Shown: piece by piece, positions 3,312-61,124 of the stretch | Numbering within the stretch: position 1 is the stretch's first letter | Layout: each line of letters opens with the position of its first letter | Source of the DNA: Rebecca billardiae RCC1528 | Taxonomy: Eukaryota; Protista; Haptophyta | Direction of reading: 5' to 3' | Assembly: GCA_965240325.2 (NCBI GenBank) | Contig: OZ251226.1 | Coordinates: 1,550,001-1,614,000, forward strand | DNA length: 64,000 nucleotides | Translations under genes and position numbers: made by a program | The notes under the pieces: model-generated | The model's input: the letters and a program-made list of their open reading frames with translations, nothing else | Database searches by the model: none | Told to the model about the DNA's origin: nothing

Positions 3312-6300
3312 CTACATGGCGATCCTGCTTCTGGGAAGCGCGTTCGACCCGCGAGAGCCATGGGCAGACTGCTGCACCTGCCCGCGGTACGTGGTGTCCG
3401 CGAGACGCTCTGTGTTCATGCGGACAGATCGCATCTGGTCGACCAGATTCGCCACCTGTCGCACGCAGAGAGCGCCGCGCAAATCGCACGGGGCAAACGG
3501 CATCGTGATGAGTGCTGCCGCGGGCGGGGCAAGCGCGCGGACTGTGGGGGGCGCGGGGCACTCACGTTCTGCTGCAGGCCGCGAAGCACCTCGCCGAGCA
3601 CGTCCTGCACCGTCGGCGCATCGATCACCCACTTCTTGACGAGCGGGTAGATCCTCTCCAGGACGTAGTCGCGCACGGCCCGCTGCGAGGCCTCGAACGA
3701 TTTGATCTCGTCGAATAGTTCGGGCATCTGCTCGCGCGCGAGCGGGGCGGGCCGTACGCTGTGAGTCGCAGGGCTTGGCCCCCCGGGGGACGGCGCGCGC
3801 AGGCGAGCGCAATCGGCGCACCTCCTCGGCGAGCACGGGGCCCTGGCGGCGCTCCATGTCGCGCGCCTCCTCGACGATGACCGTGAAGTAGTGGATGCCG
3901 TCCTGCTGCGACTCCATCCAGTCGCGCAGCTGCTCGGCCTCCTGCAGCATCTCCTCCAGGCTGGAAATAGCCTTCTCCTCGTTCTCGAGCAGCTGCTCTT
4001 CGAAGTCGTCCACCTTGGCGCGCTCCTTGCGGGCGCTCGGGTCGCCGCGGACGCCGCCTCGCGACTGAATCAGCGAGCGGATGATCGGGTGCTCCTCGGA
4101 CTCCTCGCGCATGGCGTCGTCGAGCGGCGTGCGGCCGAAACTGTCGGTCGTGTTCACATTGATGCCTGGCACGGTCAGCAGGTAGTTGCACGCCGAGAGC
4201 TTCACCGAGGACGCGGCCACGTGCAGCGGCGTGCGGCCCATCGCGTCCTGCACGTTGACATCGCACCTGAAGCGAATGAGCCGCTGGAGCTGGTCGACGT
4301 CGTCGTCCACTGCCGCCTCGCACATCCACTGCGCGGGATCGAACGTCCCCAGGTGCGCTGAGTTGGAGAGCAGCAGGTCGACGCACGCGTCGTTCTTGGA
4401 GAGCAGCGCGTCCTGCAGCGGCGTCACGCCCCAGCGGTCGCGCGCATTCACGTGCGCGCCGTAGTCGATGAGCAGCTCGCAGTTGCGCACCTGGCCGCTC
4501 GCCGCGGCGACGTGCAGCGCCGTGCGCTTGTCTTGGTCGTTCAGGTTGACGTCCACGCCGAAGCGGCACAGCTTCATGAGCTTCACGTCGCCGCCCGTTT
4601 CTATCGCCGCGAGGCACAGGTCTTCGACCTGCGTGTCCCCGCCACGAGTGCCGCCCTTGCTCCACAAGAGCTCGGCCACGTCGTTGTGGTTGTGCCGGAG
4701 GGCGTCGCTGAGCGGGGTGCCGTTGTGATGATCCTCCACCGCCAGATCAGCGGACGAGTCGAGCAGGAGCTTGACGACCTCGAGGTGCCCGCCGCACGCC
4801 GCGAGGTGCAGCGCACGCCGCCCGCTGCGGTCGCCGCGGTTGACGTCCACGCTCGTGTTCTGGATGATCTCCTTCGCGCTCGCGAGGTCGCCCTTCGCGC
4901 ACGCGATGACGAGCCGGCTGAGGTGCAGGTCGTCGCGCTTCTCTCGCGCGCTCAGGAGCACCTTCTCCAATGACGTCCGGTTGTCTTCCACAGGGGCCTC
5001 AGCCTGCTTTGAGCCACTGTTGCCGGTCTTGTCGCTCGACTCCGATGGCGGTGATTTCACCGCAGTGAGGGCCGTTGCCTTGGACCTGGCAGACAGCTTC
5101 GACCTGTGGCTCCCCACTGCGCACGCAGAGGGCAACACAGGGCAACGGGCGCGCGGCGCGCGCACGAGTGCGTGTCAGCTGTGTGCGCAGCGCGTGAGAG
5201 CACCGCAGTCCGATCGCGCTCACCTTCATCGAAAATGCGCGCGTACTGGCGCATCGCGCTGTCCATCATCAGCCCCTCCTCCTGCGGGTACGTCTTGGTC
5301 AGCGCCTTGTACGCGTCGCGCGTGAGCGCGTACACGACCGTCTCCACGCTGCGTGCGGAGCGGCCGTTCTTGAAGTGGCGGATGTTGAATGTGAATGCCA
5401 TGCCGCCGACGGTGGTGCCAGAGCCGCGCACGTCGACACCGTCGTTGTCGTCGTACGCTGCCTCAATCTCGCTGAGCTGCATCTCGTCCTCGTACATCTC
5501 GATGCTGCCCGACTTGATGACAAGCAGCTCGCTGCAGACCTCGCCCATGCGGAAGACCATCGACTCCGGCTCGATGCGACGCTCCTTGAGCACCGAGGCG
5601 AAGCGATCCTTGAAGCCCTCCGAGCACTCGGCGAGCAGCGAGCAGCCGCTGATGAGATGCCGTACGGTGTGCTTGGACACTTCGAGCTGAAGCGACATGG
5701 GGAGCATGTCGTACACCTGCTCCGACTGCACGGACGAGAGCGACGCGTCCTTCAGCCGCGCGTGGAAGAACGCCTCGATCTTCGCCTTGAGGTCGGCAGG
5801 CACGCGGATGTGCGCGACGTACGACTGCACGATCTCGAGCTGCGCGCGCTTGGCCACGATCTCGTCGTCCTGCTTCATCACGAGCGCCGAGATCTGGCCG
5901 ACAGTCCACGCGTACACGGTCATGTTCACGATCATCGCGACCACGAAGAAGAGCAGCTCGGCGTACGTCGCCGGGAGCTGTGTCAGCCCGAGCGACGTGA
6001 GCATCGTCATGACGAAATAGAGGCACATCAGGTACTGGTTTGCAAACGAGCGGTGCTCGTCCTCCGCTGGGTTGATGGCCTGCTCGTTCTCGAGTAGCAT
6101 CGTCCACCACGTCGTCGGTTCGTTCTGGGCCGGCGGGGAGAATGCGCACAGATTCCAGATACACGAGCCGATGTGGGCCGTGTACAGCAGCACGCCCAGG
6201 TACAGCTGCAGGCCGCTGCGGAGGTCGTCATCGGGGCAGCGCTTCCGCCAGCGCCGCACAGCAGCGCGCACATACCGCATGTTGATCATGCGCAGCAAGC

Positions 6301-9300
6301 GGAGCACGAACGGAACGAAGGCGGGCGCGCCCACGGCGAGCGCAAGGAAGTTGTGCGGCCAGCACGCAAAGCAGTCGAGCGGGAAGTCCCTCGCAAAGTA
6401 TTGCCGAGCGATCCCAGCGGGGTCGTACACGGTGACCGAGTGCTGATTCACGACGGAGACGCGGAAGCGCAGCGCGATGCGCATGAGGTAGAAGATGTCT
6501 GCGACGATGCCCGTGAACAGCAGCTCTGGCGTGTGGACCGAGCGCTCCACGAAGCACACGCTGACGGGGATGATGACCGCATCCCACGCCGTGAGATACA
6601 GGAACAAGGTCTCGAACAGACCGAACGCCCTCGACTCGTGGCGGAGGATGAAGCGAGGCACATCGTGCGCGGACGTTGACGACCCACCGTCTGGCTTACC
6701 CTCAACCAGTGCAAGCAGTCGCGTTGACCGAGCTAGGCCGAGGGCTGCACCGATGCGCAGCTTTGCGCGGCTCGCCTCGTCGATGTGCTCCAGCAGCGGA
6801 GTCGCCTCCTCTGCAGCCGAGTCGCGGTCTTGGTTGTCCGTCAAGGCCTCGCGGTGTGCGTGCAGCGCTTCGACCATCCGCTGCCACGTCGGTGGCTGAT
6901 CAGCATCCTGCTGCTGCCCAACTTCGGTGAGCATGATGCCGTTGGCCTGCACGGGGCCGCCGTCGTCACTCGTGGCATCGCTGGTAGCATCGCTGTCATC
7001 GCTGTCGGGCGCCGCGCGAGCTGCGGCTTGCGGTTGAACCATCTTCACCTTCAGGTCCATGTCGAGCTTCTCGGCCGCCCACTCCTCGACGTGCGCCGGC
7101 GTGATGTCGTCCGGAATCGCGAGCGTCTGCCGCATGTGGTAGAGCAGCGCCCCAGCTTGCACCATGCCGGCGGGGTCCAGCCGCTCGCTGTCGATGTGCT
7201 GAGAGATGTGGCTTGCAAGGGCGATGCACGCGCGCGGCTCAGACAACGCACTGCCAAGCGCCTCCTTGGCCTTGTCCTCGAGCGTCAGCAGCTCCAGGCC
7301 CTGCAGGTCCTCGAGCCCACCCGCCTCGTCGTCGAGCGTGTTCTCGCGGCCACCGACCGTCAGCTGACTTACTGCGTTCGCCAGCAGCCATGATGAGACG
7401 CCGACGTAAAACTGCATCTCCGTCAAAAAGCGCGCCGAGCTCGACGCCTTCTTGAACGAAGACAGCGGGCTGCCAGAGCGAGAGCGCGAAGCTTCGGAAG
7501 AGTCCGTGTCCGAGTGCGAGCCAGCCGATTCTGAGGTCATCGTGCTCTCCGACAAGGAATCGCGCGGGGCACGCTGAGGGAAAGCTGGGTTCGACGTCTT
7601 AGGGGGAGGCGGCTCGGACGAGACGTCTGAGTCCGCGCCGTCGGAGTGCGAGATCATGGGCTCCATTGACACGGGTGGCGGCCCCGAAGCTGCAATGTCC
7701 GCGAGCATCTCGTCGTGGTGGTCCGCGTATCGGTCGGCGCCCTGCATGTCAAGAGCGCCGGCAGGCATTGTCGCGGTCGTCTCGAGCGCCTGCTTCAGCA
7801 GCTCGTCCTCCGTCTTGCCCATCTCCGCCGGCAGACGCTCCTTGCGGTGCTTCGGACCCACCTGATCCGAGCGGTGCGACACCTCCACCTCCGACGGCAG
7901 CAGCTGCAGCAGCTGACCCAGCTTCGCCAACCGCTCCTTCAGGTCGCTCCCGCCGCCAACCTCGAACTGCACGCCAAAGCACAGGCGGTACACGCCGTTC
8001 GAGTCGTGCACCGGACGCATCGACAGCAGGTTCTGGAACGTCTCGCCGTTCTTGCGGTAGTTGGTGATCTTCACGAAGCAGTCCGCGCCGCGGCGGAGCG
8101 TGTCCTGGATGATCGCCACAGACGCCGGCTCCGTGCGCGGGCCCTGCAAGAACCGGCAGTTCCGACCCTGCGCCTCGTACTTCGCAAAGCCCGTCACGCG
8201 GCAGAACTCGCGGTTCACAAACAGCATCGGGTTGCCCGGCATCGCCATGTCCGACAGCACGATGCACGCCTTGAACGTCTCCGCGAACGCGACGAACGAG
8301 TGGATGAAGCCAGCCAGGTCCTCCGGAACCTTGTACTTGTCCCAGATCAGGTCCTTGCGCTGCTTGATGCGCTGGCCCGCCACGGCAGCGTCCACGATCG
8401 CGTCGCACAACGGCGAGCGCACAAACCGAGCCAGCGCGTCGCCCGCGAGCTTCTTGCCAATCTCGGACACCTTCTCCTCCACGGCGCGCATGTCCATCGA
8501 CTTGGCCTGCGCAGAGCTCAGACCGAGGTGGCGCTCGAGCACCGTGCGCTTCCGCACGTCGCGAGACGCGCCCGCCGCCATGCTGCTCAGCTTCCGACCC
8601 TCGGACCAGAACTCGAGCTCGCTGTCCTCGTTGGACTCCTTCAGGAACGAGCGGAACGCGTCGTACGCCTGCGCGTCCTCAGTCAGACGCTCCAGGCTCG
8701 ACTCAGAGTCGAGCGTCCACTTCAGACGAGTGAACAGCGCCTGCGCCGAGCGGAACTGACGCTCCTTCGCGCCCTCGTCCACATACACCGCCTGCGCAGC
8801 AAACGTCGACGGCTGCGCAGACGCCGGCATGCGCCGCGGCAGCAGCTCGCGCAGCGCCGACAGCGCCTGCTGCTCCTCCGCCGTCTGCTCCTCCGCGCAC
8901 GACAGCACGCCCAGCGAGTACCGGTACTCGCCGTTCGTGTCCATCACCGGCGTGAGCGACAGGTCGTTCGTGAAGCGAGAGCCGTTCTTGCGGTAGTTCG
9001 TCACCTGCACGCGCAGCTCTGTCTTCTTGCGCAGCGCGCGCACCATCTTCGACACCATGTTCGGCTCCGTCCGGTCGCCCTGCAAGAAGCGGCAGTTGCG
9101 GCCCTCCACCTCGTACTTCGGGTAGCCGGTCACGCGCGTGAAGCCGCCGTTGCAGTACATCACCGTCACGCCCGGCACCGTCATGTCCGTGATCGCAACC
9201 GCGAGCGGCAGCTGATCGACGGCCGCCTTGAGCGCGCCCAGCCACGTGCCGTCGCCCACGCTCGGCACGCTGCCCGCGCTCAGCGCCTGCAGGATCTCCA

Positions 9301-12300
9301 TCGTCGGCTGCGGAAGGCTGACGCCACCGTAAGCGTCGCCTGCAACACTCATCGAGCTCACCTGATACTGCTGCTCCTGCTGCTGCGCCATGCCCATGCC
9401 CAGAGCGCCTGAAGCCATGCTCATCGACATGCGAGGCTGCATGGCTGGGGACATCGCCTGCGCGCTGGCGTAGCCGTTGCAACAACTGCCCATTGCACCC
9501 ATCACGCCAAGTGGCTGCTGCGCCATGCCCAGGCCAGGGCTCAGACCCGCGCCCATGCCCATGCCCACGCCCATGCCCATACCTGGCGCCATCGACATGC
9601 GCGAAGGCGGCGCGCCCGACGACATGCTCATCGACGCGCGCGACGCCATCGCCGGGCTCATCGACATCGGCGGCGCCATCATCGGCGCCGCCATCGTCGG
9701 CGCCATCGGCGTCTCGTCGAACGGCAGGCTGCCGCCCGAGATCTCCGCCATCATCTCGTCGTGGTGGTCCGCGTAGCGGTCGGCGCCCTGCATGTCGAGC
9801 GCGGTCGGCGGCATCGCGGCGGTCGTCTCGAGCGCCTGCTTCAGCAGCTCGTCCTCCGTCTTGCCCATCTCCGCCGGCAGACGCTCCTTGCGGTGCTTCG
9901 GGCCCACCTGATCCGAGCGGTGCGACACCTCCACCTCCGACGGCAGCAGCTGCAGCAGCTGACCCAGCTTCGCCAACCGCTCCTTCAGGTCGCTCCCGCC
10001 GCCAACCTCGAACTGCACGCCAAAGCACAGGCGGTACACGCCGTTCGAGTCGTGCACCGGACGCATCGACAGCAGGTTCTGGAACGTCTCGCCGTTCTTG
10101 CGGTAGTTGGTGATCTTCACGAAGCAGTCCGCGCCGCGGCGGAGCGTGTCCTGGATGATCGCCACAGACGCCGGCTCCGTGCGCGGGCCCTGCAAGAACC
10201 GGCAGTTCCGACCCTGCGCCTCGTACTTCGCAAAGCCCGTCACGCGGCAGAACTCGCGGTTCACAAACAGCATCGGGTTGCCCGGCATCGCCATGTCCGA
10301 CAGCACGATGCACGCCTTGAACGTCTCCGCGAACGCGACGAACGAGTGGATGAAGCCAGCCAGGTCCTCCGGAACCTTGTACTTGTCCCAGATCAGGTCC
10401 TTGCGCTGCTTGATGCGCTGGCCCGCCACGGCAGCGTCCACGATCGCGTCGCACAACGGCGAGCGCACAAACCGAGCCAGGGCGTCGCCCGCGAGCTTCT
10501 TGCCAATCTCGGACACCTTCTCCTCCACGGCGCGCATGTCCATCGACTTGGCCTGCGCAGAGCTCAGACCGAGGTGGCGCTCGAGCACCGTGCGCTTCCG
10601 CACGTCGCGAGACGCGCCCGCCGCCATGCTGCTCAGCTTCCGACCCTCGGACCAGAACTCGAGCTCGCTGTCCTCGTTGGACTCCTTCAGGAACGAGCGG
10701 AACGCGTCGTACGCCTGCGCGTCCTCAGTCAGACGCTCCAGGCTCGACTCAGAGTCGAGCGTCCACTTCAGACGAGTGAACAGCGCCTGCGCCGAGCGGA
10801 ACTGACGCTCCTTCGCGCCCTCGTCCACATACACCGCCTGCGCAGCAAACGTCGACGGCTGCGCAGACGCCGGCATGCGCCGCGGCAGCAGCTCGCGCAG
10901 CGCCGACAGCGCCTGCTGCTCCTCCGCCGTCTGCTCCTCCGCGCACGACAGCACGCCCAGCGAGTACCGGTACTCGCCGTTCGTGTCCATCACCGGCGTG
11001 AGCGACAGGTCGTTCGTGAAGCGAGAGCCGTTCTTGCGGTAGTTCGTCACCTGCACGTGCAGCTCCTTCTTCTTGCGCAGCGCGCGCACCATCTTCGACA
11101 CGATGTTCGGCTCCGTCCGGTCGCCCTGCAAGAAGCGGCAGTTGCGGCCCTCCACCTCGTACTTCGGGTAGCCGGTCACGCGCGTGAAGCCGCCGTTGCA
11201 GTACATCACCGTCACGCCCGGCACCGTCATGTCCGTGATCGCAACCGCGAGCGGCAGCTGATCGACGGCCGCCTTGAGCGCGCCCAGCCACGTGCCGTCG
11301 CCCATGCTCGGCACGCTGCCCGCGCTCAGCGCCTGCAGGATCTCCATCGTCGGCTGCGGAAGGCTGAAGCCGCCACCGCCGTCGCCCATGCCGCCCGCGC
11401 CGCCCATCGCGCTCGGCGGCTGCTGCGCCGCCATGCCCATGCCCATGCCCATGCCCGGCGCCATCGACATGCGCGAAGGCGGCGCGCCCGACGACATGCT
11501 CATCGACGCGCGCGGCGCCATCGCCGGGCTCATCGACATCGGCGCCGCCATCATCGGCGCCGCCATCGTCGGCGCCATCGGCGTCTCGTCGAACGGCAGG
11601 CTGCCGCCCGAGATCTCCGCCATCATCTCGTCGTGGTGGTCCGCGTAGCGGTCGGCGCCCTTCATGTCGAGCGCGGTCGGCGGCATCGCGGCGGTCGTCT
11701 CGAGCGCCTGCTTCAGCAGCTCGTCCTCCGTCTTGCCCATCTCCGCCGGCAGACGCTCCTTGCGGTGCTTCGGGCCCACCTGATCCGAGCGGTGCGACAC
11801 CTCCACCTCCGACGGCAGCAGCTGCAGCAGCTGACCCAGCTTCGCCAACCGCTCCTTCAGGTCGCTCCCGCCGCCAACCTCGAACTGCACGCCAAAGCAC
11901 AGGCGGTACACGCCGTTCGAGTCGTGCACCGGACGCATCGACAGCAGGTTCTGGAACGTCTCGCCGTTCTTGCGGTAGTTGGTGATCTTCACGAAGCAGT
12001 CCGCGCCGCGGCGGAGCGTGTCCTGGATGATCGCCACAGACGCCGGCTCCGTGCGCGGGCCCTGCAAGAACCGGCAGTTCCGACCCTGCGCCTCGTGCTT
12101 CGCAAAGCCCGTCACGCGGCAGAACTCGCGGTTCACAAACAGCATCGGGTTGCCCGGCATCGCCATGTCCGACAGCACGATGCACGCCTTGAACGTCTCC
12201 GCGAACGCGACGAACGAGTGGATGAAGCCAGCCAGGTCCTCCGGAACCTTGTACTTGTCCCAGATCAGGTCCTTGCGCTGCTTGATGCGCTGGCCCGCCA

Positions 12301-39300: not shown

Positions 39301-42300
39301 CGCCAACACTTGGCATTGTGGCCCGCCCATCCGCGGTGGCCGTCAACGCGCGTAGGATGCCCGCGGTCGCCTCCGGCAGCTGAAAGTTGATGTTCTCCTG
39401 GCCCGGTGCAGGTGCGTGCATGATGCGGCTCGGGTTCAACCCACTGATCTCCTCGAGCATCTCGTCGTGGTGGTCCGCGAAACGGTCGGCGCCGTGCATG
39501 TCGAGCGCGGTCGGCGGGATCGTCGCAGTCGTCTCGAGCGCCTGCTTCAGCAGCTCGTCCTCCGTCTTGCCCATCTCCGCCGGCAGACGCTCCTTGCGGT
39601 GCTTTGGCCCGACCCGCTCCGATGCGTGCTGCACCTGCACCTCCGACGGCAGCAGCTGCAGCAGCTGACCCAGCTTCGCCAACCGCTCCTTCAGGTCGCT
39701 CCCGCCGCCAACCTCGAACTGCACGCCAAAGCACAGGCGGTACACGCCGTTCGAGTCGTGCACCGGACGCATCGACAGCAGGTTCTGGAACGTCTCGCCG
39801 TTCTTGCGGTAGTTGGTGATCTTCACAAAGCAGTCTGCGCCGCGGCGGAGCGTGTCCTGGATGATCGCCACAGACGCCGGCTCCGTGCGCGGGCCCTGCA
39901 AGAACCGGCAGTTCCGACCCTGCGCCTCGTGCTTCGCAAAGCCCGTCACGCGGCAGAACTCGCGGTTCACAAACAGCATCGGGTTGCCCGGCATCGCCAT
40001 GTCCGACAGCACGATGCACGCCTTGAACGTCTCCGCGAACGCGACGAACGAGTGGATGAAGCCCGACAGGTCCTCCGGCACCTTGTACTTGTCCCAGATC
40101 AGCTCCTTGCGCTGCTTGATGCGCTGGCTGCCGACAGCAGCCTCGACGAGGGGCGCGCATGCTGCCGAGCGGACAAAGCGAGGCACGCAGTCGACAGCCA
40201 ACCGTCCTCGGACCTCGGCGACCTTGCTCTCGATGGCGTCCATGTCCATCGCCTTCGCCTGCGCGCTCGTCATCTTGAGGTACTTCTCGCAGATCTTGCG
40301 CTTGTGCGCGTCGCGCGAGCCGCCCTTCATGTTGGCCAGCTTGCGCGACTCGATCCAGAACTCGAGCTCGTTGTCCTCGCCGGTCTCCTTGAGGAACGAG
40401 CGGAACGCGGCGAGAGACGCAGCGTCGTCGGCCAAGCGCGCAAGTGTCGCATCGGCGTCGAGCGTCCACTGCAGCTTGGTGAAGAGCAGCTGCGCGTCGC
40501 GGAACTGCCTGTCCTTCGCCTCGTCGTCCACCGCTGCTTCGCGCGCGAAGCTCAGCGGCTGCGCAGACGCCGGCATGCGCCGCGGCAGCAGCTCGCGCAG
40601 CGCCGCCAGCGCCTTCTGCTCCCCCGCCGTCTGCAGCTCGAGGCACGACAGCACGCCCAACGAGTACCGGTACTCGCCGTTCGTGTCCATCACCGGCGTG
40701 AGCGACAGGTCGTTCGTGAAGCGAGAGCCGTCCTTGCGGTAGTTCGTCACCTGCACGTGCAGCTCCTTCTTCTTGCGCAGCGCGCGCACCATCTTCGACA
40801 CCATGTTCGGCTCCGTCCGGTCGCCCTGCAAGAAGCGGCAGTTCCGGCCCTCCGTGTCGTACTTTGGGTAGCCCGTCACGCGCGTGAAGCCGCCGTTGCA
40901 GTACATCACCGTCACGCCCGGCACCGTCATGTCCGTGATCGCAACCGCGAGCGGCAGCTGATCGACCGCCACCTTGAGCGCGCCGAGCCACGTGCCGTCG
41001 CCAACACTTGGCATTGTGGCCCGCCCATCCGCGGCGGCCGTCAACGCCCGTAGGATGCCCGTGGTCGCCTCCGGCAGCTGAAAGTCGATGTCCTCTCCCC
41101 GTGCAACTGCGTGGACGATGCGGCTCGGGTTCAACCCACTGATCTCCTCGAGCATCTCGTCGTGGTGGTCCGCGAAACGGTCGGCGCCGTGCATGTCGAG
41201 CGCGGTCGGCGGGATCGTCGCAGTCGTCTCGAGCGCCTGCTTCAGCAGCTCGTCCTCCGTCTTGCCCATCTCCGCCGGCAGACGCTCCTTGCGGTGCTTT
41301 GGCCCGACCCGCTCCGATGCGTGCTGCACCTGCACCTCCGACGGCAGCAGCTGCAGCAGCTGACCCAGCTTCGCCAACCGCTCCTTCAGGTCGCTCCCGC
41401 CGCCAACCTCGAACTGCACGCCAAAGCACAGGCGGTACACGCCGTTCGAGTCGTGCACCGGACGCATCGACAGCAGGTTCTGGAACGTCTCGCCGTTCTT
41501 GCGGTAGTTGGTGATCTTCACGAAGCAGTCCGCGCCGCGGCGGAGCGTGTCATGGATGATCGCCACAGACGCCGGCTCCGTGCGCGGGCCCTGCAAGAAG
41601 CGGCAGTTCCGACCCTGCGCCTCGTGCTTCGCAAAGCCCGTCACGCGGCAGAACTCGCGGTTCACAAACAGCATCGGGTTGCCCGGCATCGCCATGTCCG
41701 ACAGCACGATGCACGCCTTGAACGTCTCCGCGAACGCGACGAACGAGTGGATGAAGCCAGCCAGGTCCTCCGGAACCTTGTACTTGTCCCAGATCAGCTC
41801 CTTGCGCTGCTTGATGCGCTGGCTGCCGACAGCAGCCTCGACGAGGGGCGCGCATGCTGCCGAGCGGACAAAGCGAGGAACACAGTCGAAGGCCAACCGT
41901 CCTCGGACCTCGGCGACCTTGCTCTCGATGGCGTCCATGTCCATCGCCTTCGCCTGCGCGCTCGTCATCTTGAGGTACTTCTCGCAGATCTTGCGCTTGT
42001 GCGCGTCGCGCGAGCCGCCCTTCATGTTGGCCAGCTTGCGCGACTCGATCCAGAACTCGAGCTCGTTGTCCTCGCCGGTCTCCTTGAGGAACGAGCGGAA
42101 CGCGGCGAGAGACGCAGCGTCGTCGGCCAAGCGCGGGAGTGTCGCCTCCGTGTCGAGCGTCCACTGCAGCTTGGTGAAGAGCAACTGCGCGTCGCGGAAC
42201 TGCCTGTCCTTCGCCTCGTCGTCCACCGCTGCTTCGTGCGCGAAGCTCAGCGGCTGCGCCGACGCCGGCATGCATCGCGGCAGCAGCTGCCGCAGCGCCG

Positions 42301-45113
42301 ACAGCGCCTGCTGCTCCTCCGCCGTCTGCTCCTCCGCGCACGACAGCACGCCCAGCGAGTACCGGTACTCGCCGTTCGTGTCCATCACCGGCGTGAGCGA
42401 CAGGTCGTTTGTGAAGCGAGAGCCGTCCTTGCGGTAGTTCGTCACCTGCACGTGCAGCTCTGTCTTCCTGCGCAGCGCGCGGACCATCTGCGAGACGATG
42501 TTTGGCTCCGTCTGCTCGCCCTGCAAGAAGCGGCAGTTGCGGCCCTCGACCTCGAACTTGGCGTAGCCCGTCAGCCGCGCGAAGGCGTCGTTGCAGTACA
42601 TCACCTTCACGCCGGGCACGGTCATGTCCGTGATCGCCACCGCGATGGACAGCGGCTCGACCGCCGCCTTGAGCGCGCCGAGCCAGGTGCCGTCGCCCGC
42701 CTTGGCGGGCATCGAGCCGCGGCCCTCGCCCGCCCCGCACATCGCCTTCAAGGTGTCCACCGTCTGCTGCGGCAGGTGCTCGCGCGCCACGTCGCTTTGC
42801 TCATTGCCCGCCGAGGACTCGTCGTCATCGCGCTCGAAAGACGCGGCCATGTTGGTCGCCGCCATCACCTTGGTCGCCTCCTTGAGGTGCGTGCGCAGCG
42901 ACTCGAGCTCCTCGCTGCCCACCTCCGTCTGCAGCTGCCTCACGTCGCTCAGCCGGATCGCGCCGCGCTTCTTGGCGTCGAACACCTTGTGCAGGTTGGA
43001 CAGCACGAATGCCGTGTCGGCGAGGGCCTCGCGCATCCCCGAGAGGCTCCCCTTGGCGCTCGCGCTGGAGATGCTGCTCTTCGCGGTCCGCGCCGCGAGC
43101 AGGTTGACGAAGCGCTTCGAGCAGAAGAGCACGACGCAGCCGAGGTCGGAGATGAAGAAGGGCGCCGTCGACTCGGACGATGGCTGGATGTTCGTCATGC
43201 CGGCGAGCGCGTTGAGCGAGGCGGCGAGGATGCTCTGCGGGGCGGGCTGGGTCGAGCCGCGGCGGGCGAACGAGGCACCGTTGCTCGGCGCGATGCTGCC
43301 GCGCGCGCCCGCGCCTGCCTCACCGCCGGCTGCCTGCCCCTGCGTGCTGCCCCGCCGGCGCGGCGCCCCGCCGGCCAAGTGCTGGGTGACCGCAAAGAGC
43401 GAGCTGCCCTGGATGGAGCCGGAGCGGAGGAAGCGGCGGATGGCGAAGTCGCCGGTCGGCATGGGCGTGTCGTGCGGCGACGGGCTCGGCCGCCGTGGCG
43501 CGTTCGCGCCGGCGAATGATTTGAGTCCCGTGTAGATCTCGTCCATCACCGCGTTGGCGTCCACGTAGTCCAGGCCGACGTCGCGGAGCAGGATGTCCTC
43601 GAGCGCGAGCGCCTCCTGCCGCAGCCGCTCGTTGACGGGCAGCGAGTCGCGCGCCTCGGGCGAGAGCCGCTTGAGGAAGAGGTCGCGGAGCATCGAGATG
43701 CCCTCTTCCGCGCGCGGCATGCGGAGGATCGTGCGCACGAACAGCTTGGTCGCCTGCTCGGTGTCGTCATCATTCGCGTCGTGGCCGGAGCGGTCGGCGC
43801 CATCGTCGCTGTCCGAGCCCTCCGACTGGTCGGAGGCATCCTCGTACGAGTCGAGGTCGGACTGGCTGCCGCTGTCCGAGCCGCCCGCGTCCTTCGAGTA
43901 GTTGGCGATCCAGCTGTCCGTCGCCTTGTCCAGCATCCGCGCCAGGATCTTGGACGCCCTGGTGAACCTGTTCACGTCCTTGCTGAGCGACTTGAGGCTG
44001 ACGGTGATCGGCTGCCGCAGCGCCTGCTTGGTCTCGCGCAGCGCCATCCGCTTCTCGCCGTGCACCTTGAGCTTGCGGTCGATGCGGTACAGGTTGACCG
44101 TCTTGGCCTGGTCGAACGCCTCGCACAGCTCCTCGTCCTCGGCGTACCCATCGGGCAGGTGCGCTCCGCACATCTGCACGACCAGCGCGGCCGTGTCGAG
44201 GTTGCTCTCGAGCGCGGGCACGAGCGGCGACGCGCCCCAGCGGTCGAGCGCCATCACGTCCGCGCGCGCGGCGATGAGCACGGCTGCGGCGGAGATGGCG
44301 CCCGTCGACGCGACGCGGTGGAAGGCGGTGCGCCCGTCGTAGTCCGACGCGTCCACCTCCACGCCCATGTCGACGAGGAAGCGCAGGAAGTTGATGTCGG
44401 ACGTGGTGGCCGCGTGGAGCAGGGCCTTCTCCATGCGCACCGGGTCCGCGCGCGAGTTGGCCTCGGCGAGCATGCGCGCGACGTGGAGGTGCTGGTTCTG
44501 GATGGCGTCGTCGATCGGCTTGCGCCCGCGCTTGTCCTCCGCGTTCACGTCCGCGAGGTGCGACATCAGGTGCTCGACGACGCGCACGTTGCCCTCCGCC
44601 GCGGCGATGTGCAGCGCGGTGCGGTCGTCGTAGTTCTTTGCCTGCACGTCGATGCCGTACGCGAGGATCATCGACATGTACGTGAGGTCGCCGTCACTCG
44701 CCGCCTTGTGCATCCACGCGGCGGGGTGCTCGACGTCGATCTCCGCGCCGAAGCTGCTCAGCACGCTCGCCACGTTGTCGTGCCGGCTGTCGATCGCATC
44801 GCGCATCGGCGTGCAGCCCCAGCGGTCCTTGGCGTTGACGTCGGCGCCGAGCTCGCACAGCAGCTGCACCACCTTGAAGCTGCCGTCGGCGGCGGCGAGG
44901 TGCATCGTCGTGCGCGAGTCGTAGCCCGACATGTTCAGGTCGAAGCCGCGGTCGGCGAGCGTGCGCACGGTCTCCACGTCGCCCTGCATCGCCGCCGCCG
45001 ACATCTGCGCGAACGCCGCCTGGTTGCGCTCGATGATGGTCTGGCGGATCTTCTCCTTGAGCTCCTCCGCCTCCTCGTCCGCGTTCTTGGAGTCCTCCGC
45101 GTCCGCGCTGGCC

Positions 45114-45190
<77 letters not shown>

Positions 45191-47291
45191 AACGTAGCCG
45201 ATCTGCGTGATGTCGTTGCCGTGCTTGTCGAGCCCAAACTTGCGCAGCAGGCTCGACGTGATCATGTCGGCCTGGTCGGGGTACGACTGGATGATGTTCT
45301 CGTACTCGGAGACGGTGAGGGCGAGCAGCGTGACGTAGCCGGCGGAGGAGGCCATCACCGTGTACGGCTGGTGGATGCCGAGGAAGAAGGCGAGCTCGCC
45401 CACCACTTGGCCCGGCCCGAGGTCGGCGAGGATGGTCGCCACGTTCTCGTCGCCCTTGCGCACGTGGAGGGTGCCGCCGACGCACCACAGCAGCTCGGTC
45501 GCGCCCTCGCCCTGGAAGAAGAGAGGCTCTCCCGGCATGACGAAGCGCTCGCGCACGGCGAGGACGATCTGGCCGAGGAACTGCGGCGAGCAGCCGTACA
45601 GCACCCACGTGGCCTGCATCTCGCGCAGGTACTGCGCCGACGCGACCTGCGTGCGCAGCGAGGGCGGCAGCTGCTGGAACACCTTGCCCGAGCTGGACGA
45701 GCTCTTGTGGTGCTGCGCGGTGCCGACAGATGCGCGTGCCCAGGGCCAGGGCGGGGAGCGGAGCGTGTGAGCGCGCGCGCGGGGGGGCGCAGGCTGGCCG
45801 CGCAGCAAGGGGCGCGCGGCGCACCTGGAACTCGAAGTGCGCGCGCACGCGCCCCGCGAGCGCCGTCGGCAGCTTGTTGGCGCGCGTGTACCCGTCGACG
45901 GCCTTCATCAGCTCCTTGAAGTGGACGGTCGACTCGTCCACGCGCACGAGGTAGTGAAAGAGAGTACCGAGCACGAAGGCGTAGAAGACGATCTGCAGGA
46001 CCATGATGAAGATGGCGAAGGACGCCTCGGGCTCGCGCCCGGTGAGCTGCACCGAGCCGTAGCCCATCGACGTGATGCCCGCCCAGCCCATGTACGACGA
46101 GAGCAGGTACGCCTGCCAGCCCGCAGCCTGCGTCGGGTCAAAGTCGTCGTTGTGTGCCCACTGCGCAGGCCACGAGGGCAGCTTGAGCGCCTCGTCCGAG
46201 TCCACAGCGCGCTCGGAGAGGAGCCACCACACGCAGCTCACCCAGTGCGGCACCGAGACGAGCACGAGCGCGAACTTGAACGAGGCGAAGAAGGTGACGT
46301 TCGTCGTGAGGTCCGTGGACATGCGGTGCATGTGCTCGAGCAGGTCGTACACACGCGCGCAGCGCAGGACCTGCCCGAGCGTCCACACCCACTCGAAGTC
46401 GTTGATGATGTACAGCGCGCGCCCGACGTGCAGCACGCTGATCACCGCGATGTCGCGGAGCACGTGGCTCAGCGTGTACGCCGGGGGGGCGCCCTCGGCG
46501 GCCTGCTCCGTGGCGGGCGCCGGCTCGCGGCACGTCTTGGCGATGTAGAGCAGCTCGTACCCGTCGATCACGATGTCGACCAGGATGCCCGCGGGGCTGG
46601 CGAGCAGCAAGGTCGGGAAGGCGACGCGCACGGGGATGAGCAGCTCCTCGCCCGCGAGGAACCAGAGGCGCGCGGCGCGGTACTTGCGCCACGAGCGCCG
46701 CTCCTCCGACGCAGCGGCGCGGGCCATCAGCCCCAGCGCGTCCTCGGCGCCCGACTCCTCCGCCGCCGCGCGCTCCTCGTCGTTGCCCACGAGGACGGCA
46801 CGCCAGGTCACGCGGCGCTCGCGTGGGCTCGAGGCGCTTGTGCTCGAAGGCTCGTCACGCGCACCCGCGCGCCTCCCGGCGTCTGGCGAGGTCGCGTCCT
46901 CCGCGCTCGAGTTGCGCAGGATGCCCTTCACCTGCGGCGACGGCGGAAGTGGCGACAGCCGTGAGGATGCCGAACCTCGCCCGGGCGGCGAGTCAGGGAG
47001 CCGCATAGCGCCCGCCTTCCAGTTGGCCTGCTTCTTCCAGCTCGAGCCCAAACCACCTTCCCCTTCGCTCGTCGCCGCTCCGCGCGCGGACCGGCCGCCC
47101 ACGGACGTGCTGAGCGCCGCACGCACATTCGCAACAGCGCTGCGCGACGCCTCCGCGGCCCGATGCAGCGGGGCGTTCGAGCTCTGCGCCGTGGGTTGCG
47201 GCTTTGGCTGATCCCCGGTGGACACCAGCGCTGCGCGCTCCGCGCCCCGCCGACGTGGCGGAGGCGAGTAGTAGCCCGCCGGAGCAGACAT
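3312..47291 (-). CDS. Giant tandem two-module SKOR/GORK-like (CNBD-ankyrin) K+-channel-family protein with an internal array of 19 LOV-RGS-LOV units; about 14,518 aa; exons 47291-45825, 45712-5224, 5116-3822, 3727-3566, 3455-3312
   Basis: ORFs 44694..47420, 5057..45808, 3312..5165 and 3416..3727 join in frame through four GT...CAG introns (exon sum 43,557 nt = 14,519 codons including TAG). Motifs in order: pore TSMGYGS, CNBHD GELAFFLGIHQPYTV, ankyrins, 38 x GRNCRFLQG, 19 x ELEFW RGS-like, second 6TM with pore TSLGLT, CNBHD, ankyrins. Start ATG 47291 is the first in-frame ATG and is not confirmed. Confidence 0.88.
3456..3565 (-). other. Intron 4 of the giant gene (110 bp)
   Basis: AAC|GTGAGT ... 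CGACAG|GTG. Confidence 0.75.
3728..3821 (-). other. Intron 3 of the giant gene (94 bp)
   Basis: GAG|GTGCGC ... GAGCAG|ATG. Confidence 0.75.
4050..4925 (-). other. Ankyrin repeat block 2, followed by a C-terminal coiled-coil-like acidic region
   Basis: DRSGRRALHLAACGG, DHHNGTPLSDA, DQDKRTALHVAAASG, DRWGVTPLQDA, DAMGRTPLHVAAS, DSFGRTPLDDA. Confidence 0.92.
5117..5223 (-). other. Intron 2 of the giant gene (107 bp, phase 1)
   Basis: G|GTGAG ... GCGCAG|TG; joins CNBHD2 to the ankyrin ORF in frame. Confidence 0.8.
5270..5869 (-). other. C-linker and cyclic-nucleotide-binding homology domain 2
   Basis: VPADLKAKIEAFF, LPMSLQLEV, PESMVFRMGEVCSELLVIKSG, GTTVGGMAFTFNIRH, YKALTKTYP. Confidence 0.82.
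5870..6660 (-). other. Channel module 2 transmembrane region (S1-S6) with non-canonical filter TSLGLT at 5981-5998
   Basis: FETLFLYLTAWDAVIIPVSVCF (S1), IVADIFYLMRIALRFR (S2), FPLDCFACWP (S3), LRLLRMINMRYVR (S4), YTAHIGSCIW (S5), YLMCLYFVMTMLTSLGLT (pore), FFVVAMIVNMTVYAWTVGQISALV (S6). Confidence 0.87.
7700..42780 (-). repeat. In-frame tandem array of 19 LOV-A / RGS-like / LOV-B units; period 1686-2046 bp, mostly 1872 or 1890 bp
   Basis: Homologous marker positions 8061, 10107, 11979, 13869, 15759, 17631, 19521, 21411, 23301, 25191, 27081, 28953, 30825, 32715, 34563, 36249, 38115, 39813, 41508; every spacing is a multiple of 3; each unit has two GRNCRFLQG motifs. Confidence 0.96.
44160..45010 (-). 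other. Ankyrin repeat block 1
   Basis: YDSRTTMHLAAADG, DRWGCTPMRDA, YDDRTALHIAAAEG, DKRGRKPIDDA, DYDGRTAFHRVASTG, DRWGASPL. Confidence 0.92.
45116..45187 (-). repeat. (GGC)n microsatellite encoding 24 glycines, with one GGT interruption
   Basis: Direct read: gcc repeats 45116-45187 with acc at 45152. Confidence 0.95.
45275..45944 (-). other. C-linker and cyclic-nucleotide-binding homology domain 1 (spans intron 1)
   Basis: LPTALAGRVRAHFEFQ, LPPSLRTQV, PGEPLFFQGE, GQVVGELAFFLGIHQPYTV; QPYTV matches the plant SKOR/GORK form as I recall it. Confidence 0.85.
45713..45824 (-). other. Intron 1 of the giant gene (112 bp)
   Basis: CAG|GTGCGC ... GCGCAG|CAC; joins HFEFQ to HHKSS in frame and restores the C-linker. 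Confidence 0.85.
45945..46690 (-). other. Channel module 1 transmembrane region (S1-S6) with K+ signature TSMGYGS at 46053-46073
   Basis: Hydrophobic segments: S4-like QVLRCARVY, S5 LVSVPHWVSCVWWLL, pore helix YLLSSYMGWAGITSMGYGS, S6 FAIFIMVLQIVFYAFVLGTLF. Boundaries approximate. Confidence 0.85.
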
Positions 47292-55132: not shown

Positions 55133-55368
55133 CTCGGCGAGCGCCCGCGCCTCCGGCGCGCGTCGGCGGCCCCGCGACGCCAGGGCTCAAAGCAATGCAA
55201 GACCTTCAACCTGATACGCCGGCCATTGCTTTGATTTCATCAGTCATCATCACAGCAGACTTTTCACATTGTAAAGTTATCTCGCCTGCCTGAGCTGTGT
55301 GCGTCTCTTATTCTTAGTAAACTGTAGTATCACTTTTGGCCAAATTTGGCCGCGGTCAGCTTCCCAAG

Positions 55369-56652: not shown

Positions 56653-56956
56653 AGGCCGAGTGAATGCGCGTGGCTACCAGTACCAGCGGCACCCGCCTTG
56701 GCCGACCTGCTTGAGTCGTAGCTTACCGTACTGTGGAACCGGTGTCGGCAGCAGCGGGAAGGTAGACGAGTCAATGATGATGAGTGATGACTTCAGACAG
56801 TCACAGTTCAGCGTTCAGAGTTCAGACTGACTTGGGCACTGTCTTGGCTGCCGGGAATCTCCTTGTCACGTAACTCGTAAGACAGTCTCCGAATCTCACC
56901 ATGGCCGCCGCGACAGCGTGACGTCCTTGTGGCAAGGCAAGCGAGGGCAAGGCGCC

Positions 56957-60944: not shown

Positions 60945-61124
60945 CGCGCCGGTCCGTGGCCGCTGCCCTCCACGCCGGCCGTGAGAGAGCCGACCCCCTC
61001 GCCCGCCAGCGGCGTTCCGCGCGGCAGTTCTGCTGCTGGGTTTCCAGGTTATTCAAAATGGGTGGCTGGTCAGGAGCGCGCAGACGCTTGTTGTCCGGAG
61101 ATTCCTCCCGGGCCTCTTGGCACG

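What the first reader, a model, noticed from the sequence alone, without database searches (positions are those of the whole stretch)
3312..47291. Candidate natural blue-light-regulated ion channel: 38 LOV photosensor domains fused inside a tandem K+-channel-family protein
Seen: one uninterrupted 40.5-kb exon runs from CNBHD1 and ankyrins through 19 LOV-RGS-LOV units into a second complete 6TM channel and CNBHD, so the LOV-channel fusion does not depend on any splice prediction. All 38 LOV domains keep GRNCRFLQG. Known: LOV domains bind flavin and form a blue-light-induced Cys adduct; 6TM-CNBHD-ankyrin is the plant Shaker (AKT1/SKOR/GORK) architecture. The light-gated channels I know of are rhodopsins or engineered LOV fusions such as BLINK; I do not know of a natural LOV-bearing channel, but I cannot search. 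Inference: the cytosolic array couples blue light to channel gating, clustering or localisation, i.e. flavin-based photoelectric signalling.
Basis: partly seen in the sequence, partly recalled or inferred. Interest (0 to 1): 0.97.

Follow-up and report, generated by a model that had tools for sequence, protein, structure and literature searches.

The report
Giant LOV photoreceptor array–ion channel fusion
One 44-kb algal gene encodes a protein of about 14,500 residues in which 38 blue-light-sensing LOV domains and 19 RGS domains sit between the two halves of a potassium-channel-type ion channel; I found no description of such a natural flavin-photoreceptor/channel fusion, and it is a candidate for the still unknown light sensor of haptophyte algae.

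Summary
A 40,489-nt exon on the minus strand (45712-5224) runs without a stop from CNBHD1 and ankyrins, through 19 LOV-RGS-LOV units, into a complete 6TM channel and CNBHD. All 38 LOV domains keep GRNCRFLQG.

With four short GT-AG introns, the gene (47291-3312) encodes 14,518 aa. Its layout is channel module 1 (GYG filter), CNBHD, Ank, the array, channel module 2 (non-GYG filter), CNBHD, Ank.

Three results argue that the fusion is real:
- LOV-less relatives, including one from Diacronema lutheri, are tandem two-module channels colinear with both flanks of the array.
- An independent contig from another organism (P0011, 56% identity) carries (LOV-RGS-LOV)x2, linker, channel, CNBHD, Ank in one ORF.
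- The spliced model aligns without gaps to that protein across the intron sites.

The repeat unit is helmchrome-like.

Limits:
- Units 6-19 are 97-99.9% identical, so the copy number depends on the assembly.
- No RNA run was listed for this organism.
- K+ selectivity, GAP activity, cNMP binding and light gating are untested.

I found no report of a natural photoactive LOV-channel fusion. Unchecked scan notes list two more such loci in this genome (s1-343699, s1-348438).

The parts
45825..47291 (-). Exon 1: ATG at 47291, disordered N-terminus, channel module 1 (S1-S6 about 45948-46670) with K+-type filter TSMGYGS at 46053-46073
   Evidence: Pfam Ion_trans; tblastn colinearity with P0023/P0025/P0082; translation; PDB hits EAG1/SKOR/AKT1 about 1e-8; coordinates
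45713..45824 (-). Intron 1, 112 nt, GT..AG, between the C-linker and CNBHD1
   Evidence: Frame shift -3 to -1 at the same residue of P0025/P0082; splice sites read
5224..45712 (-). Exon 2, 40,489 nt, uninterrupted: CNBHD1, poly-Gly, Ank1, linker, 19 units, linker, module 2, CNBHD2
44162..45601 (-). CNBHD1 (45245-45601; PBC reads GELA...QPYTV, so the canonical Arg is replaced), a poly-Gly run of about two dozen residues, and ankyrin repeats 1 (44162-45025)
   Evidence: Pfam cNMP_binding 1e-9, Ank_2 4e-33; sequence; coordinates
33938..42724 (-). Array units 1-5: the older, diverged LOV-A/RGS/LOV-B units (80-95% nt identity to each other and to the core)
7928..33937 (-). Array units 6-19: the young core, period 1,872/1,890 nt, 97-99.9% identical. 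Unit 18 has a longer Met/Gly/Ser-rich linker. Unit 19 ends just after the LOV-B J-alpha helix.
   Evidence: AF2 model of unit 10: pLDDT 77, pTM 0.67, three folded domains at about 90
7055..7315 (-). Conserved helical domain before S1 in the post-array linker, shared with LOV-less relatives
   Evidence: pLDDT 86-96 in the AF2 model; homology to P0011/P0001/P0023
5273..6625 (-). Channel module 2: S1-S6 (5879-6625; S4 with RLLRxxNxRxxR), non-GYG filter TSLGLTQ (5978-5998), C-linker, CNBHD2 (5273-5638)
   Evidence: Pfam Ion_trans 1e-9; PDB sequence hits GORK 3e-25, hERG 1e-24, HCN1 3e-23; AF2 pLDDT about 85-93 and Foldseek hits GORK/HCN1/CNGA1/AKT1 at E about 1e-20
3312..5223 (-). 3' part: intron 2 (5117-5223), exon 3 with Ank2 (3822-5116), intron 3 (3728-3821), exon 4 (3566-3727), intron 4 (3456-3565), exon 5 with the stop codon at 3312-3314
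   Evidence: Pfam Ank_2 4e-43; GT..AG sites; the spliced product aligns without gaps to P0011 and P0001 across exon junctions 3/4 and 4/5, and across junction 2/3 with only small gaps in a poorly conserved low-complexity stretch

Best explanation
This is a genuine, very large gene of a high-GC flagellate alga, probably a haptophyte of the pavlovophyte kind. A helmchrome-type blue-light receptor cassette (LOV-A, RGS, LOV-B, conserved J-alpha extension) was inserted into the cytosolic linker between the two modules of an older tandem channel of the form (6TM-CNBHD-Ank)x2. It was then amplified by unequal crossing-over to about 19 units. The product is a membrane-anchored flavin photoreceptor with up to 38 FMN sites per chain, hanging as a roughly 11,600-residue cytosolic loop from a CNBD-family cation channel. 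If the two modules share one pore, as in a dimer of tandems, that pore alternates a GYG filter with a non-GYG filter. Shown here: the anatomy, the intact photochemical motifs, the fold assignments, the insertion site, and the existence of the same LOV-to-channel junction in a second organism. Inferred: blue light forms Cys-flavin adducts and releases the J-alpha extensions, and this conformational change reaches the channel. The signal could travel through the LOV nearest to S1, about 440 residues upstream. That is the same PAS, long linker, 6TM, CNBHD topology as in KCNH channels, where the PAS domain docks on the CNBHD. Alternatively it could act through light-dependent compaction or membrane binding of the whole loop. 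Either way, photoreception would be converted locally into ion flux for photobehaviour. The RGS domains may add a G-protein output.
For: Single stop-free exon with 38 intact GRNCRFLQG motifs. Pfam architecture. LOV matches to solved LOV structures at 1e-27, with conserved flavin-contact residues. RGS profile against PDB at 8e-10. AF2 model of a unit with three confident domains. Module 2 sequence and fold matches to GORK/hERG/HCN1/CNG/AKT1. LOV-less tandem relatives (P0023, P0025 from MMETSP, P0031, P0082 = Diacronema lutheri KAG8466681.1) have Ion_trans-cNMP-Ank twice. Their linker aligns to the window up to 42860, about 45 residues before the array start at 42724, and again from 7432, about 165 residues after its end, with only about 110 of their residues in between (P0023). 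P0011 on JGI contig Ga0186516_100041 (locus L002) carries LOV-A-RGS-LOV-B twice, then the same linker, channel, CNBHD and Ank in one ORF at 56% identity. It is continuous where the window has introns. All unit length differences are in frame. Hydropathy peaks of 1.6 or more lie in the two channel modules, plus one ankyrin-repeat false positive; the array maximum is 1.58. A language-model search puts LOV-B + linker + module 2 next to KCNH clusters with PAS_9 + Ion_trans (score 0.98). Helmchrome-like LOV/RGS transcripts are reported from Pavlovophyceae and Prymnesiophyceae with unknown role (PMC8017926). The photopigment of haptophyte phototaxis is unknown (PMC2781859).
Against: No RNA run was listed for this organism, and reads gave only short contigs that bridge nothing. 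Transcription of the whole 43.6-kb CDS, and the absence of internal promoters or of splicing within the array, are therefore unproven. The nearest LOV lies about 440 residues from S1 and about 500 residues from Ank1, and most LOVs are thousands of residues away, so direct allosteric gating by most of them is implausible. RGS regions evolve fast (dN/dS 0.5-0.7), and by inspection the RGS4 Asn88/Asn128 equivalents are not kept. By inspection, CNBHD1 lacks the PBC Arg, and CNBHD2 lacks the PBC Glu while its Arg is not conserved in P0001. In L002 the array is interrupted by a run of N. Its transcript origin is inferred from the lack of introns and from my memory of that JGI series, not shown.
Confidence: 0.55

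Rival explanations
1. Anchor or antenna only. The channel, or just its membrane domains and ankyrins, positions a very dense helmchrome-type flavin array at a particular membrane such as the flagellar base or the area over the stigma. The light signal leaves through RGS or partner proteins, and channel conductance is not light-regulated.
For: Stand-alone multi-LOV/RGS arrays without any channel exist (P0012, 4,197 aa with 10 LOVs, a complete gene on an 18.6-kb contig; P0013, P0014). The array therefore functions on its own elsewhere. Most LOVs are too far from the pore for allostery. Helmchrome is a flagellar protein without a channel (PMC5795050).
Against: The same fusion to a channel is kept at 56% identity in a second organism, together with the conserved linker and pre-S1 domain. 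The insertion lies inside the channel polypeptide rather than at a free end.
Confidence: 0.25
2. Indirect second-messenger loop. Light controls the GAP activity of the RGS domains towards a G-alpha subunit, this changes cAMP/cGMP levels, and the CNBHDs of the same protein read out the nucleotide to gate the pore.
For: RGS and cNMP-binding-type domains occur together in one protein. Loss of the fungal RGS-LOV MoRGS5 raises cAMP (PMC6099885).
Against: By inspection, the key G-alpha-contacting Asn positions are not conserved in the family alignment. CNBHD1 has Tyr in place of the PBC Arg. CNBHD2 has Gly in place of the PBC Glu, and its Arg is lost in P0001, as in the ligand-free CNBHDs of plant Shaker and KCNH channels.
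Confidence: 0.1
3. Assembly or annotation artefact. Near-identical repeats caused two different genes, one ending in an array and one starting with an array, to be joined. Alternatively the array length was inflated, or the locus is transcribed as several separate products.
For: Core units differ by as little as 1-6 nt per 1,890 nt. Scan notes describe paralogous array genes close by (s1-343699), which could be confused during assembly. No read or RNA support could be obtained. The L002 transcript-like contig starts just before a LOV and may lack module 1.
Against: Both flanks of the array are colinear with consecutive parts of the linker of LOV-less tandem channels, as expected if they belong to one gene. 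The diverged units 1-5 adjoin unique upstream sequence, and unit 19 adjoins unique downstream sequence in the same frame. The LOV-to-module-2 junction is reproduced in another organism. This rival can change the copy number or detach module 1, but it cannot remove the LOV-channel fusion.
Confidence: 0.12

Closest known systems
Helmchrome and helmchrome-like LOV/RGS proteins of stramenopiles and haptophytes
   Same: LOV domains with an intact GXNCRFLQG motif combined with RGS domains in one cytosolic polypeptide. Relatives of the unit include Heterococcus (xanthophyte) and Pavlovales sp. CCMP2436 proteins. The LOV-A Gln-to-Leu change and the post-LOV-B extension are shared across the family.
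   Different: Helmchrome is described with a few LOV and RGS domains and no membrane or channel part (PMC8017926, PMC13737086). Here there are 19 units and they are embedded in an ion channel. Homology to the named brown-algal protein itself was not tested.
KCNH (EAG/ERG/ELK) channels
   Same: PAS domain, long linker, 6TM, C-linker and CNBHD in one chain. Module 2 hits hERG at 1e-24. The language-model search puts the LOV-B-to-CNBHD2 segment next to KCNH clusters.
   Different: The KCNH PAS domain lacks the photoactive motif and is not light-sensitive (PMC8017926). KCNH has one PAS, no RGS, no ankyrins and no tandem module. The LOV cassette here is an insertion derived from helmchrome-like genes, so the resemblance is convergent.
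Plant Shaker channels AKT1/GORK/SKOR
   Same: 6TM, CNBHD and ankyrin order. GORK is the best solved-structure match of module 2 (3e-25; Foldseek 6e-21). Module 1 has a GYG filter.
   Different: The plant channels are single-module subunits with GYG in every subunit and carry no photoreceptor. Here two modules are fused and the second has TSLGLTQ.
LOV-less tandem (6TM-CNBHD-Ank)x2 proteins, e.g. Diacronema lutheri KAG8466681.1 (P0082), MMETSP transcript P0025, P0023, P0031, Rhodelphis P0062
   Same: Same two-module backbone, colinear on both sides of the array. GYG is kept in module 1 and a divergent filter in module 2.
   Different: Their inter-module linker is about 800 residues with no LOV or RGS. 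I found no publication on this tandem family.
BcLOV4 and other fungal RGS-LOV proteins
   Same: RGS next to LOV. The signal leaves through the J-alpha helix and a basic segment. The units here have a conserved J-alpha followed by GPKHRKE.
   Different: The fungal order is RGS-LOV-DUF with one LOV, in a soluble protein that binds anionic lipids in light (PMC6099885). Lipid binding is not tested here.
BLINK1 (engineered LOV2-Kcv channel)
   Same: A LOV domain in the same polypeptide as a K+-channel-type pore.
   Different: BLINK1 is synthetic, with one LOV2 fused closely to a minimal viral pore (PMC12332018). Here the fusion is natural, with 38 LOVs, long linkers and a 6TM-CNBHD channel.

Membership tests
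LOV photosensor domains | GXNCRFLQG motif with the adduct-forming Cys | tested here: met
   38 of 38 domains read GRNCRFLQG
LOV photosensor domains | Flavin-contacting Arg/Gln of the motif, second Arg, two Asn, and the I-beta Gln | tested here: met
   LOV-B (even-numbered domains): all are present, read from alignments to solved LOV domains
LOV photosensor domains | I-beta Gln (AsLOV2 Q513 equivalent) in LOV-A | tested here: not met
   All 19 LOV-A domains have Leu (GVLS). The same holds in 14 of 20 family members. From my own knowledge, Q513L variants still form the adduct but signal differently.
LOV photosensor domains | PAS alpha/beta fold | tested here: met
   AF2 model of unit 10, pLDDT about 90 for both LOVs; Foldseek hits to phototropins and TWIN LOV 1
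LOV photosensor domains | Binds FMN and shows a blue-light photocycle | not testable with these tools
   Needs protein spectroscopy
Helmchrome-type LOV/RGS photoreceptors | LOV and RGS domains together in one polypeptide | tested here: met
   Pfam PAS_9 + RGS; RGS profile against PDB 8e-10
Helmchrome-type LOV/RGS photoreceptors | Sequence homology to the named brown-algal helmchrome (CBJ26132.1) | not tested
   That sequence was not returned by any tool. Named relatives found were Heterococcus and Pavlovales sp. CCMP2436.
Helmchrome-type LOV/RGS photoreceptors | Flagellar localisation | not testable with these tools
   Needs microscopy or flagellar proteomics
RGS (GAP for G-alpha) | Helical RGS fold | tested here: met
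   Pfam RGS 6.9e-7, 30.1 bits against a cut-off of 23.9 for unit 1; the C-terminal piece scores 21.2, below the cut-off. Profile hits to RGS5/16/8/4. Helical bundle at residues 170-301 with pLDDT above 90.
RGS (GAP for G-alpha) | G-alpha-contacting Asn residues (RGS4 N88, N128) | tested here: inconclusive
   By inspection of A3 and the RGS5 alignment, the positions read Glu and Asp or are variable. The alignment there is gapped.
CNBD-family 6TM channels (plant Shaker / KCNH / HCN / CNG) | S1-S6, pore helix, C-linker and CNBHD in this order | tested here: met
   Both modules. AF2 plus Foldseek for module 2, TM by target up to 0.58 with HCN1.
CNBD-family 6TM channels (plant Shaker / KCNH / HCN / CNG) | K+ selectivity filter T-x-G-Y-G | tested here: met
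   Module 1: TSMGYGS, conserved in relatives
CNBD-family 6TM channels (plant Shaker / KCNH / HCN / CNG) | K+ selectivity filter in module 2 | tested here: not met
   TSLGLTQ. Relatives have T[AS]LG[LIVM][AT]Q.
CNBD-family 6TM channels (plant Shaker / KCNH / HCN / CNG) | Canonical cNMP contacts in the phosphate-binding cassette (Glu, Arg) | tested here: inconclusive
   By inspection, CNBHD1 has Tyr for Arg; CNBHD2 has Gly for Glu and its Arg is not conserved
Plant Shaker subfamily (AKT1/GORK/SKOR) | Ankyrin repeats after the CNBHD | tested here: met
   Ank after both CNBHDs
KCNH channels | PAS domain docks on the CNBHD and tunes gating | not testable with these tools
   Only the linear order is shared. 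The AF2 monomer modelled the LOV poorly in the long construct.

The most novel reading that the evidence does not exclude
A natural flavin-based light-regulated ion channel. Blue light absorbed by the LOV array directly changes the open probability, or the clustering and membrane apposition, of the CNBD-type pore to which it is covalently joined. This would give haptophytes a non-rhodopsin photoelectric receptor, and optogenetics a natural LOV-channel template.
Probability: 0.3. Interest if true: 0.95.

Novelty: new variant of a known kind. Interest (0 to 1): 0.85.

Why it matters
All natural light-gated channels known so far use retinal. LOV-controlled channels exist only as engineered constructs (PMC12332018). 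A natural gene that joins photochemically intact LOV domains to a complete 6TM-CNBHD channel, conserved in at least two organisms, makes three questions directly testable:
- Can flavin photochemistry drive an ion channel in nature?
- What do helmchrome-type LOV/RGS proteins signal to? Their output is unknown.
- What is the photoreceptor of haptophyte photobehaviour? It is listed as unknown in PMC2781859.

The 19-fold array, with up to 38 flavins per chain, is also an extreme case of photoreceptor multiplication and of concerted evolution inside a coding exon. The LOV-less tandem two-module CNBD channels with asymmetric filters appear to be an undescribed channel family in their own right.

Tried and rejected
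- **Tandem Repeats Finder** found nothing, because its longest period is 500. I defined the units by motif positions instead.
- **RNA evidence:** no RNA run was listed.
- **Reads:** the only holder (X1, kind unknown, same organism code) gave 11 short contigs at depth 3-13 that bridge neither junction.
- **The metagenome-contig scan** with the junction alignment gave one weak, irrelevant locus.
- **The search for the upstream junction** (CNBHD-Ank-LOV) in other organisms was swamped by ankyrin proteins. Only the downstream junction is independently reproduced.
- **A second word-based search** from P0011 found no further LOV + Ion_trans protein.
- **The look-up of encoding contigs** for P0001 found no record. 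P0012 has no DNA available.
- **Cluster look-ups** gave few names, so neither the organism of the window nor that of P0011 could be named.
- **Foldseek on the whole unit** is dominated by the LOV domains. The RGS was therefore confirmed by a sequence profile.
- **AF2 of LOV-B + linker + module 2** modelled the LOV poorly and says nothing about LOV-CNBHD docking.
- **Literature access:** Glantz et al. 2016 (PNAS) is not held, and the supplements of PMC8017926 listing all LOV-adjacent domains are not held. A mention of such an architecture in those tables cannot be excluded.
- **Rejected readings:**
  - The long ORF is not a chance effect of high GC, because homology fixes the frame.
  - The array is not a transposon or satellite, because it consists of folded LOV and RGS domains with in-frame indels.
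  - The PAS-channel order is not homologous to KCNH, because LOV-less relatives show that the cassette was inserted.
Full report
**1. The observation**

The window has 65-70% G+C over the region. On the minus strand a single ORF of 13,583 codons runs 45808-5057, and the frame is open from 45904. It contains GRNCRFLQG exactly 38 times.

Pfam scans of the two ends and of the neighbouring ORFs gave this order:
- Ion_trans, in a different frame upstream;
- cNMP_binding, ankyrin repeats, PAS_9, RGS, PAS_9;
- at the other end PAS_9, RGS, Ion_trans (positions 3-233 of 241) and cNMP_binding;
- ankyrin repeats in the ORF 3312-5165.

A 6,234-codon ORF on the opposite strand shows that a stop-free repeat with a length divisible by three produces long ORFs mechanically. 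The coding frame therefore rests on homology, not on ORF length.

**2. Gene model**

tblastn with full-length relatives showed frame changes at three or four places. Each coincides with a canonical GT..AG intron of 94-112 nt.

The five exons are 47291-45825, 45712-5224, 5116-3822, 3727-3566 and 3455-3312. They give an uninterrupted CDS of 43,557 nt, encoding 14,518 aa and about 1.59 MDa.

The spliced product aligns without gaps to P0011 and P0001 across exon junctions 3/4 and 4/5. Across junction 2/3 the alignments have only small gaps, in a poorly conserved low-complexity stretch. This supports the splice sites. It also shows that those two database proteins come from DNA without these introns.

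Exon 2 alone (40,489 nt) joins CNBHD1, Ank1, all 19 units, module 2 and CNBHD2.

**3. The domains**

*LOV.* One unit matches solved LOV domains at E 1e-27 (a histidine-kinase LOV) and 7e-23 (aureochrome), and also phototropin LOV2. Two types alternate.
- LOV-B, the even-numbered domains, has every flavin-contacting residue including the I-beta Gln (GVQFE).
- LOV-A, the odd-numbered domains, has Leu there (GVLSC).
- This Leu is a family trait, seen in 14 of 20 relatives.

*RGS.* Pfam scores are modest: 30.1 bits in unit 1, and 21.2 in the C-terminal piece, against a cut-off of 23.9. A profile of 20 family members hits RGS5, RGS16, RGS8 and RGS4 at 8e-10 to 4e-7. AF2 gives a confident helical bundle between two confident LOV folds, with mean pLDDT 77 and pTM 0.67. 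By inspection, the Asn residues that contact G-alpha in RGS4 are not kept, so GAP activity is uncertain.

*Extension after LOV-B.* A J-alpha helix, a basic GPKHRKE patch and an ADHHDEML motif follow LOV-B and are conserved across the family.

*Channels.*
- Module 2 matches GORK (3e-25), hERG (1e-24), HCN1, SKOR, EAG1, CNGA1 and AKT1 by sequence.
- Module 2 also matches by fold. Its AF2 pLDDT is 85-93 over the 6TM, C-linker and CNBHD, and Foldseek gives E about 1e-20.
- Module 1 matches EAG1, SKOR and AKT1 at about 1e-8.
- Module 1 has a K+-type filter, TSMGYGS. Module 2 has TSLGLTQ.
- By inspection, neither CNBHD has the full canonical phosphate-binding cassette.
- Hydropathy peaks of 1.6 or more lie in the two modules, plus one false positive in an ankyrin repeat. 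The array maximum is 1.58. The array therefore lies in the cytosol between the C-terminal side of module 1 and the N-terminal side of module 2.

**4. The repeats**

- Units 1-5 are 80-95% identical at the DNA level to each other and to the rest.
- Units 6-19 are 97-99.9% identical, and some pairs differ by only 1-6 nt in 1,890.
- Unit lengths vary from 563 to 682 aa, always in frame.
- Between old and young units the RGS region has dS 0.4-0.5 and dN/dS 0.5-0.7. LOV-B has dS of only 0.01-0.06.
- The LOV segments are thus being homogenised by gene conversion, on top of any purifying selection, while the RGS and linkers drift.
- The array is young and dynamic, and its exact copy number depends on the assembly.

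**5. Relatives, and why I think the fusion is real**

An exhaustive HMMER search used the segment LOV-B + linker + module 2. I followed it with my own domain mapping of the hits. This gave three classes.

*(a) Stand-alone LOV/RGS proteins.* There are many, up to 10 LOVs in 4,197 aa (P0012, a complete gene). Named members come from Heterococcus and Pavlovales sp. CCMP2436. This is the helmchrome-like class, reported from stramenopiles and as transcripts of unknown role from Pavlovophyceae and Prymnesiophyceae (PMC8017926; PMC13737086).

*(b) LOV-less proteins of 2,100-3,000 aa.*
- Their order is Ion_trans-cNMP-Ank twice (Pfam).
- Members include Diacronema lutheri KAG8466681.1, an MMETSP transcript and Rhodelphis.
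- In the closest ones module 1 keeps GYG and module 2 does not.
- P0023 aligns to the window from module 1 up to 42860, about 45 residues before the array start at 42724. It resumes at 7432, about 165 residues after the array end, with only about 110 of its own residues in between.
- The array is thus an insertion at one point of a pre-existing inter-module linker, and both flanks belong to one gene.

*(c) One protein with both LOVs and a channel.* This is P0011 (2,567 aa, 56% identical).
- It lies on JGI contig Ga0186516_100041 (locus L002, 62% G+C).
- Its order is LOV-A-RGS-LOV-B twice, the same linker with the same pre-S1 helical domain, channel (filter STLGLAQ), CNBHD, Ank and tail, in one ORF.
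- The contig has a run of N inside the array, and its 5' end lies just before a LOV. The array is therefore probably collapsed, and module 1 may or may not belong to that transcript.
- From memory, this JGI series holds re-assembled MMETSP culture transcriptomes. I could not verify that, but the absence of the three introns fits it.

Unchecked scan notes report two further such genes in the same genome. One lies 23 kb before this window (s1-343699) and one on another piece (s1-348438).

**6. What could not be obtained**

- No RNA run was listed.
- The one run that holds the sequence gave short, low-depth contigs that confirm pieces of unique linker and repeat but bridge nothing.
- No other organism with the upstream Ank-to-LOV junction was found.

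**7. Mechanism**

*Shown:* a cytosolic loop of about 11,600 residues with 38 photochemically intact-looking LOV domains is covalently tied at both ends to CNBD-type channel modules.

*Inferred:*
- If the two modules of a chain enter the same pseudo-tetrameric pore, as the conserved GYG/non-GYG asymmetry of the LOV-less family suggests, the array is a closed loop under the channel. If they enter different pores, it cross-links channels.
- Light-induced release of the J-alpha extensions could act on the channel through the terminal LOVs. The order LOV, about 440 residues, S1-S6, C-linker, CNBHD is the order found in KCNH channels, whose non-photoactive PAS domain docks on the CNBHD. A language-model search indeed places this segment next to KCNH clusters (score 0.98).
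- Alternatively, light could drive collective compaction or membrane binding of the units. Fungal RGS-LOV proteins bind anionic lipids in light through a basic helix after J-alpha (PMC6099885).
- A route through RGS, G-alpha, cNMP and CNBHD looks less likely, because the diagnostic residues of both the RGS and the CNBHDs are degenerate.
- A pure anchor or antenna role for the channel cannot be excluded.

**8. Comparison and novelty**

The parts are known: LOV, RGS, helmchrome-like units and CNBD-family channels with ankyrins. The combination is new to the literature I could search.
- No paper combines LOV with such a channel.
- Surveys of LOV architectures in marine protists list RGS, bZIP, HSF, EF-hand, homeobox and others. 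They mention channels only as the non-photoactive animal Kv PAS domains.
- A 2025 review discusses LOV-gated K+ channels only as engineered constructs (BLINK1), in a section on channels with new functional properties.

I therefore rate it a new variant of known kinds, of high interest. The anatomy is solid and is reproduced in a second organism. The function is open but directly testable. It bears on the unknown photoreceptor of haptophyte photobehaviour (PMC2781859).

Noticed in passing
window 51614-55132 (minus strand): A 3.5-kb stretch of 81-84% G+C is open in several frames. The minus-strand frame reads as an Ala/Arg/Leu/Glu-rich, coiled-coil-like protein of 1,172 aa. No tandem repeat was found and no Pfam scan was run on it (the one attempted call failed on another entry).
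   Followed up: partly
window 9761-28465 (+ strand): A 6,234-codon ORF lies antisense to the array. It is a mechanical consequence of stop-free repeat units whose length is a multiple of three, not a gene.
   Followed up: yes
P0023, P0025, P0031, P0082 (Diacronema lutheri KAG8466681.1), P0062 (Rhodelphis): These form a family of tandem (6TM-CNBHD-Ank)x2 proteins of 2,100-3,000 aa. GYG is kept in module 1 and a divergent, non-GYG filter in module 2. I found no publication on it. It implies a pseudo-tetrameric pore with two kinds of filter.
   Followed up: partly
P0012 (4,197 aa, JGI sample 3300045300), P0013 (3,055 aa), P0014, P0024: Stand-alone multi-LOV/RGS arrays with up to 10 LOV domains and no channel occur in metagenomes. 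Amplification of helmchrome-like units is therefore not unique to this gene.
   Followed up: partly
window about 45095-45190 (minus strand): A run of about two dozen glycine codons lies between CNBHD1 and the first ankyrin block.
   Followed up: no
window 7055-7315 (minus strand): A compact helical domain about 140 residues before S1 of module 2 is confidently folded (pLDDT 86-96) and conserved in the LOV-less relatives. It may be a counterpart of the N-terminal helical domains that contact the voltage sensor or CNBD in HCN-type channels.
   Followed up: no
window 7928-33937, inter-unit linkers: The young units carry a Met/Ser/Pro/Ala/Gly-rich low-complexity linker (MSMS, GMGMGM) that the older units 1, 2 and 4 lack and that is expanded in unit 18. 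LOV-B DNA is homogenised across all units (dS 0.01-0.06), while the RGS DNA is not (dS 0.4-0.5).
   Followed up: partly
window 56918-58156 (+), 55336-56652 (+), 59352-62057 (+): Neighbouring ORFs have EamA transporter, G-patch and RING-variant Pfam hits. They show no evident functional link to the photoreceptor gene.
   Followed up: no
L002 290-385: The only other LOV-channel contig has a run of N exactly inside the first LOV-A. The frame differs on the two sides, which suggests a scaffolded, collapsed repeat array. The true unit number in that organism is unknown.
   Followed up: partly
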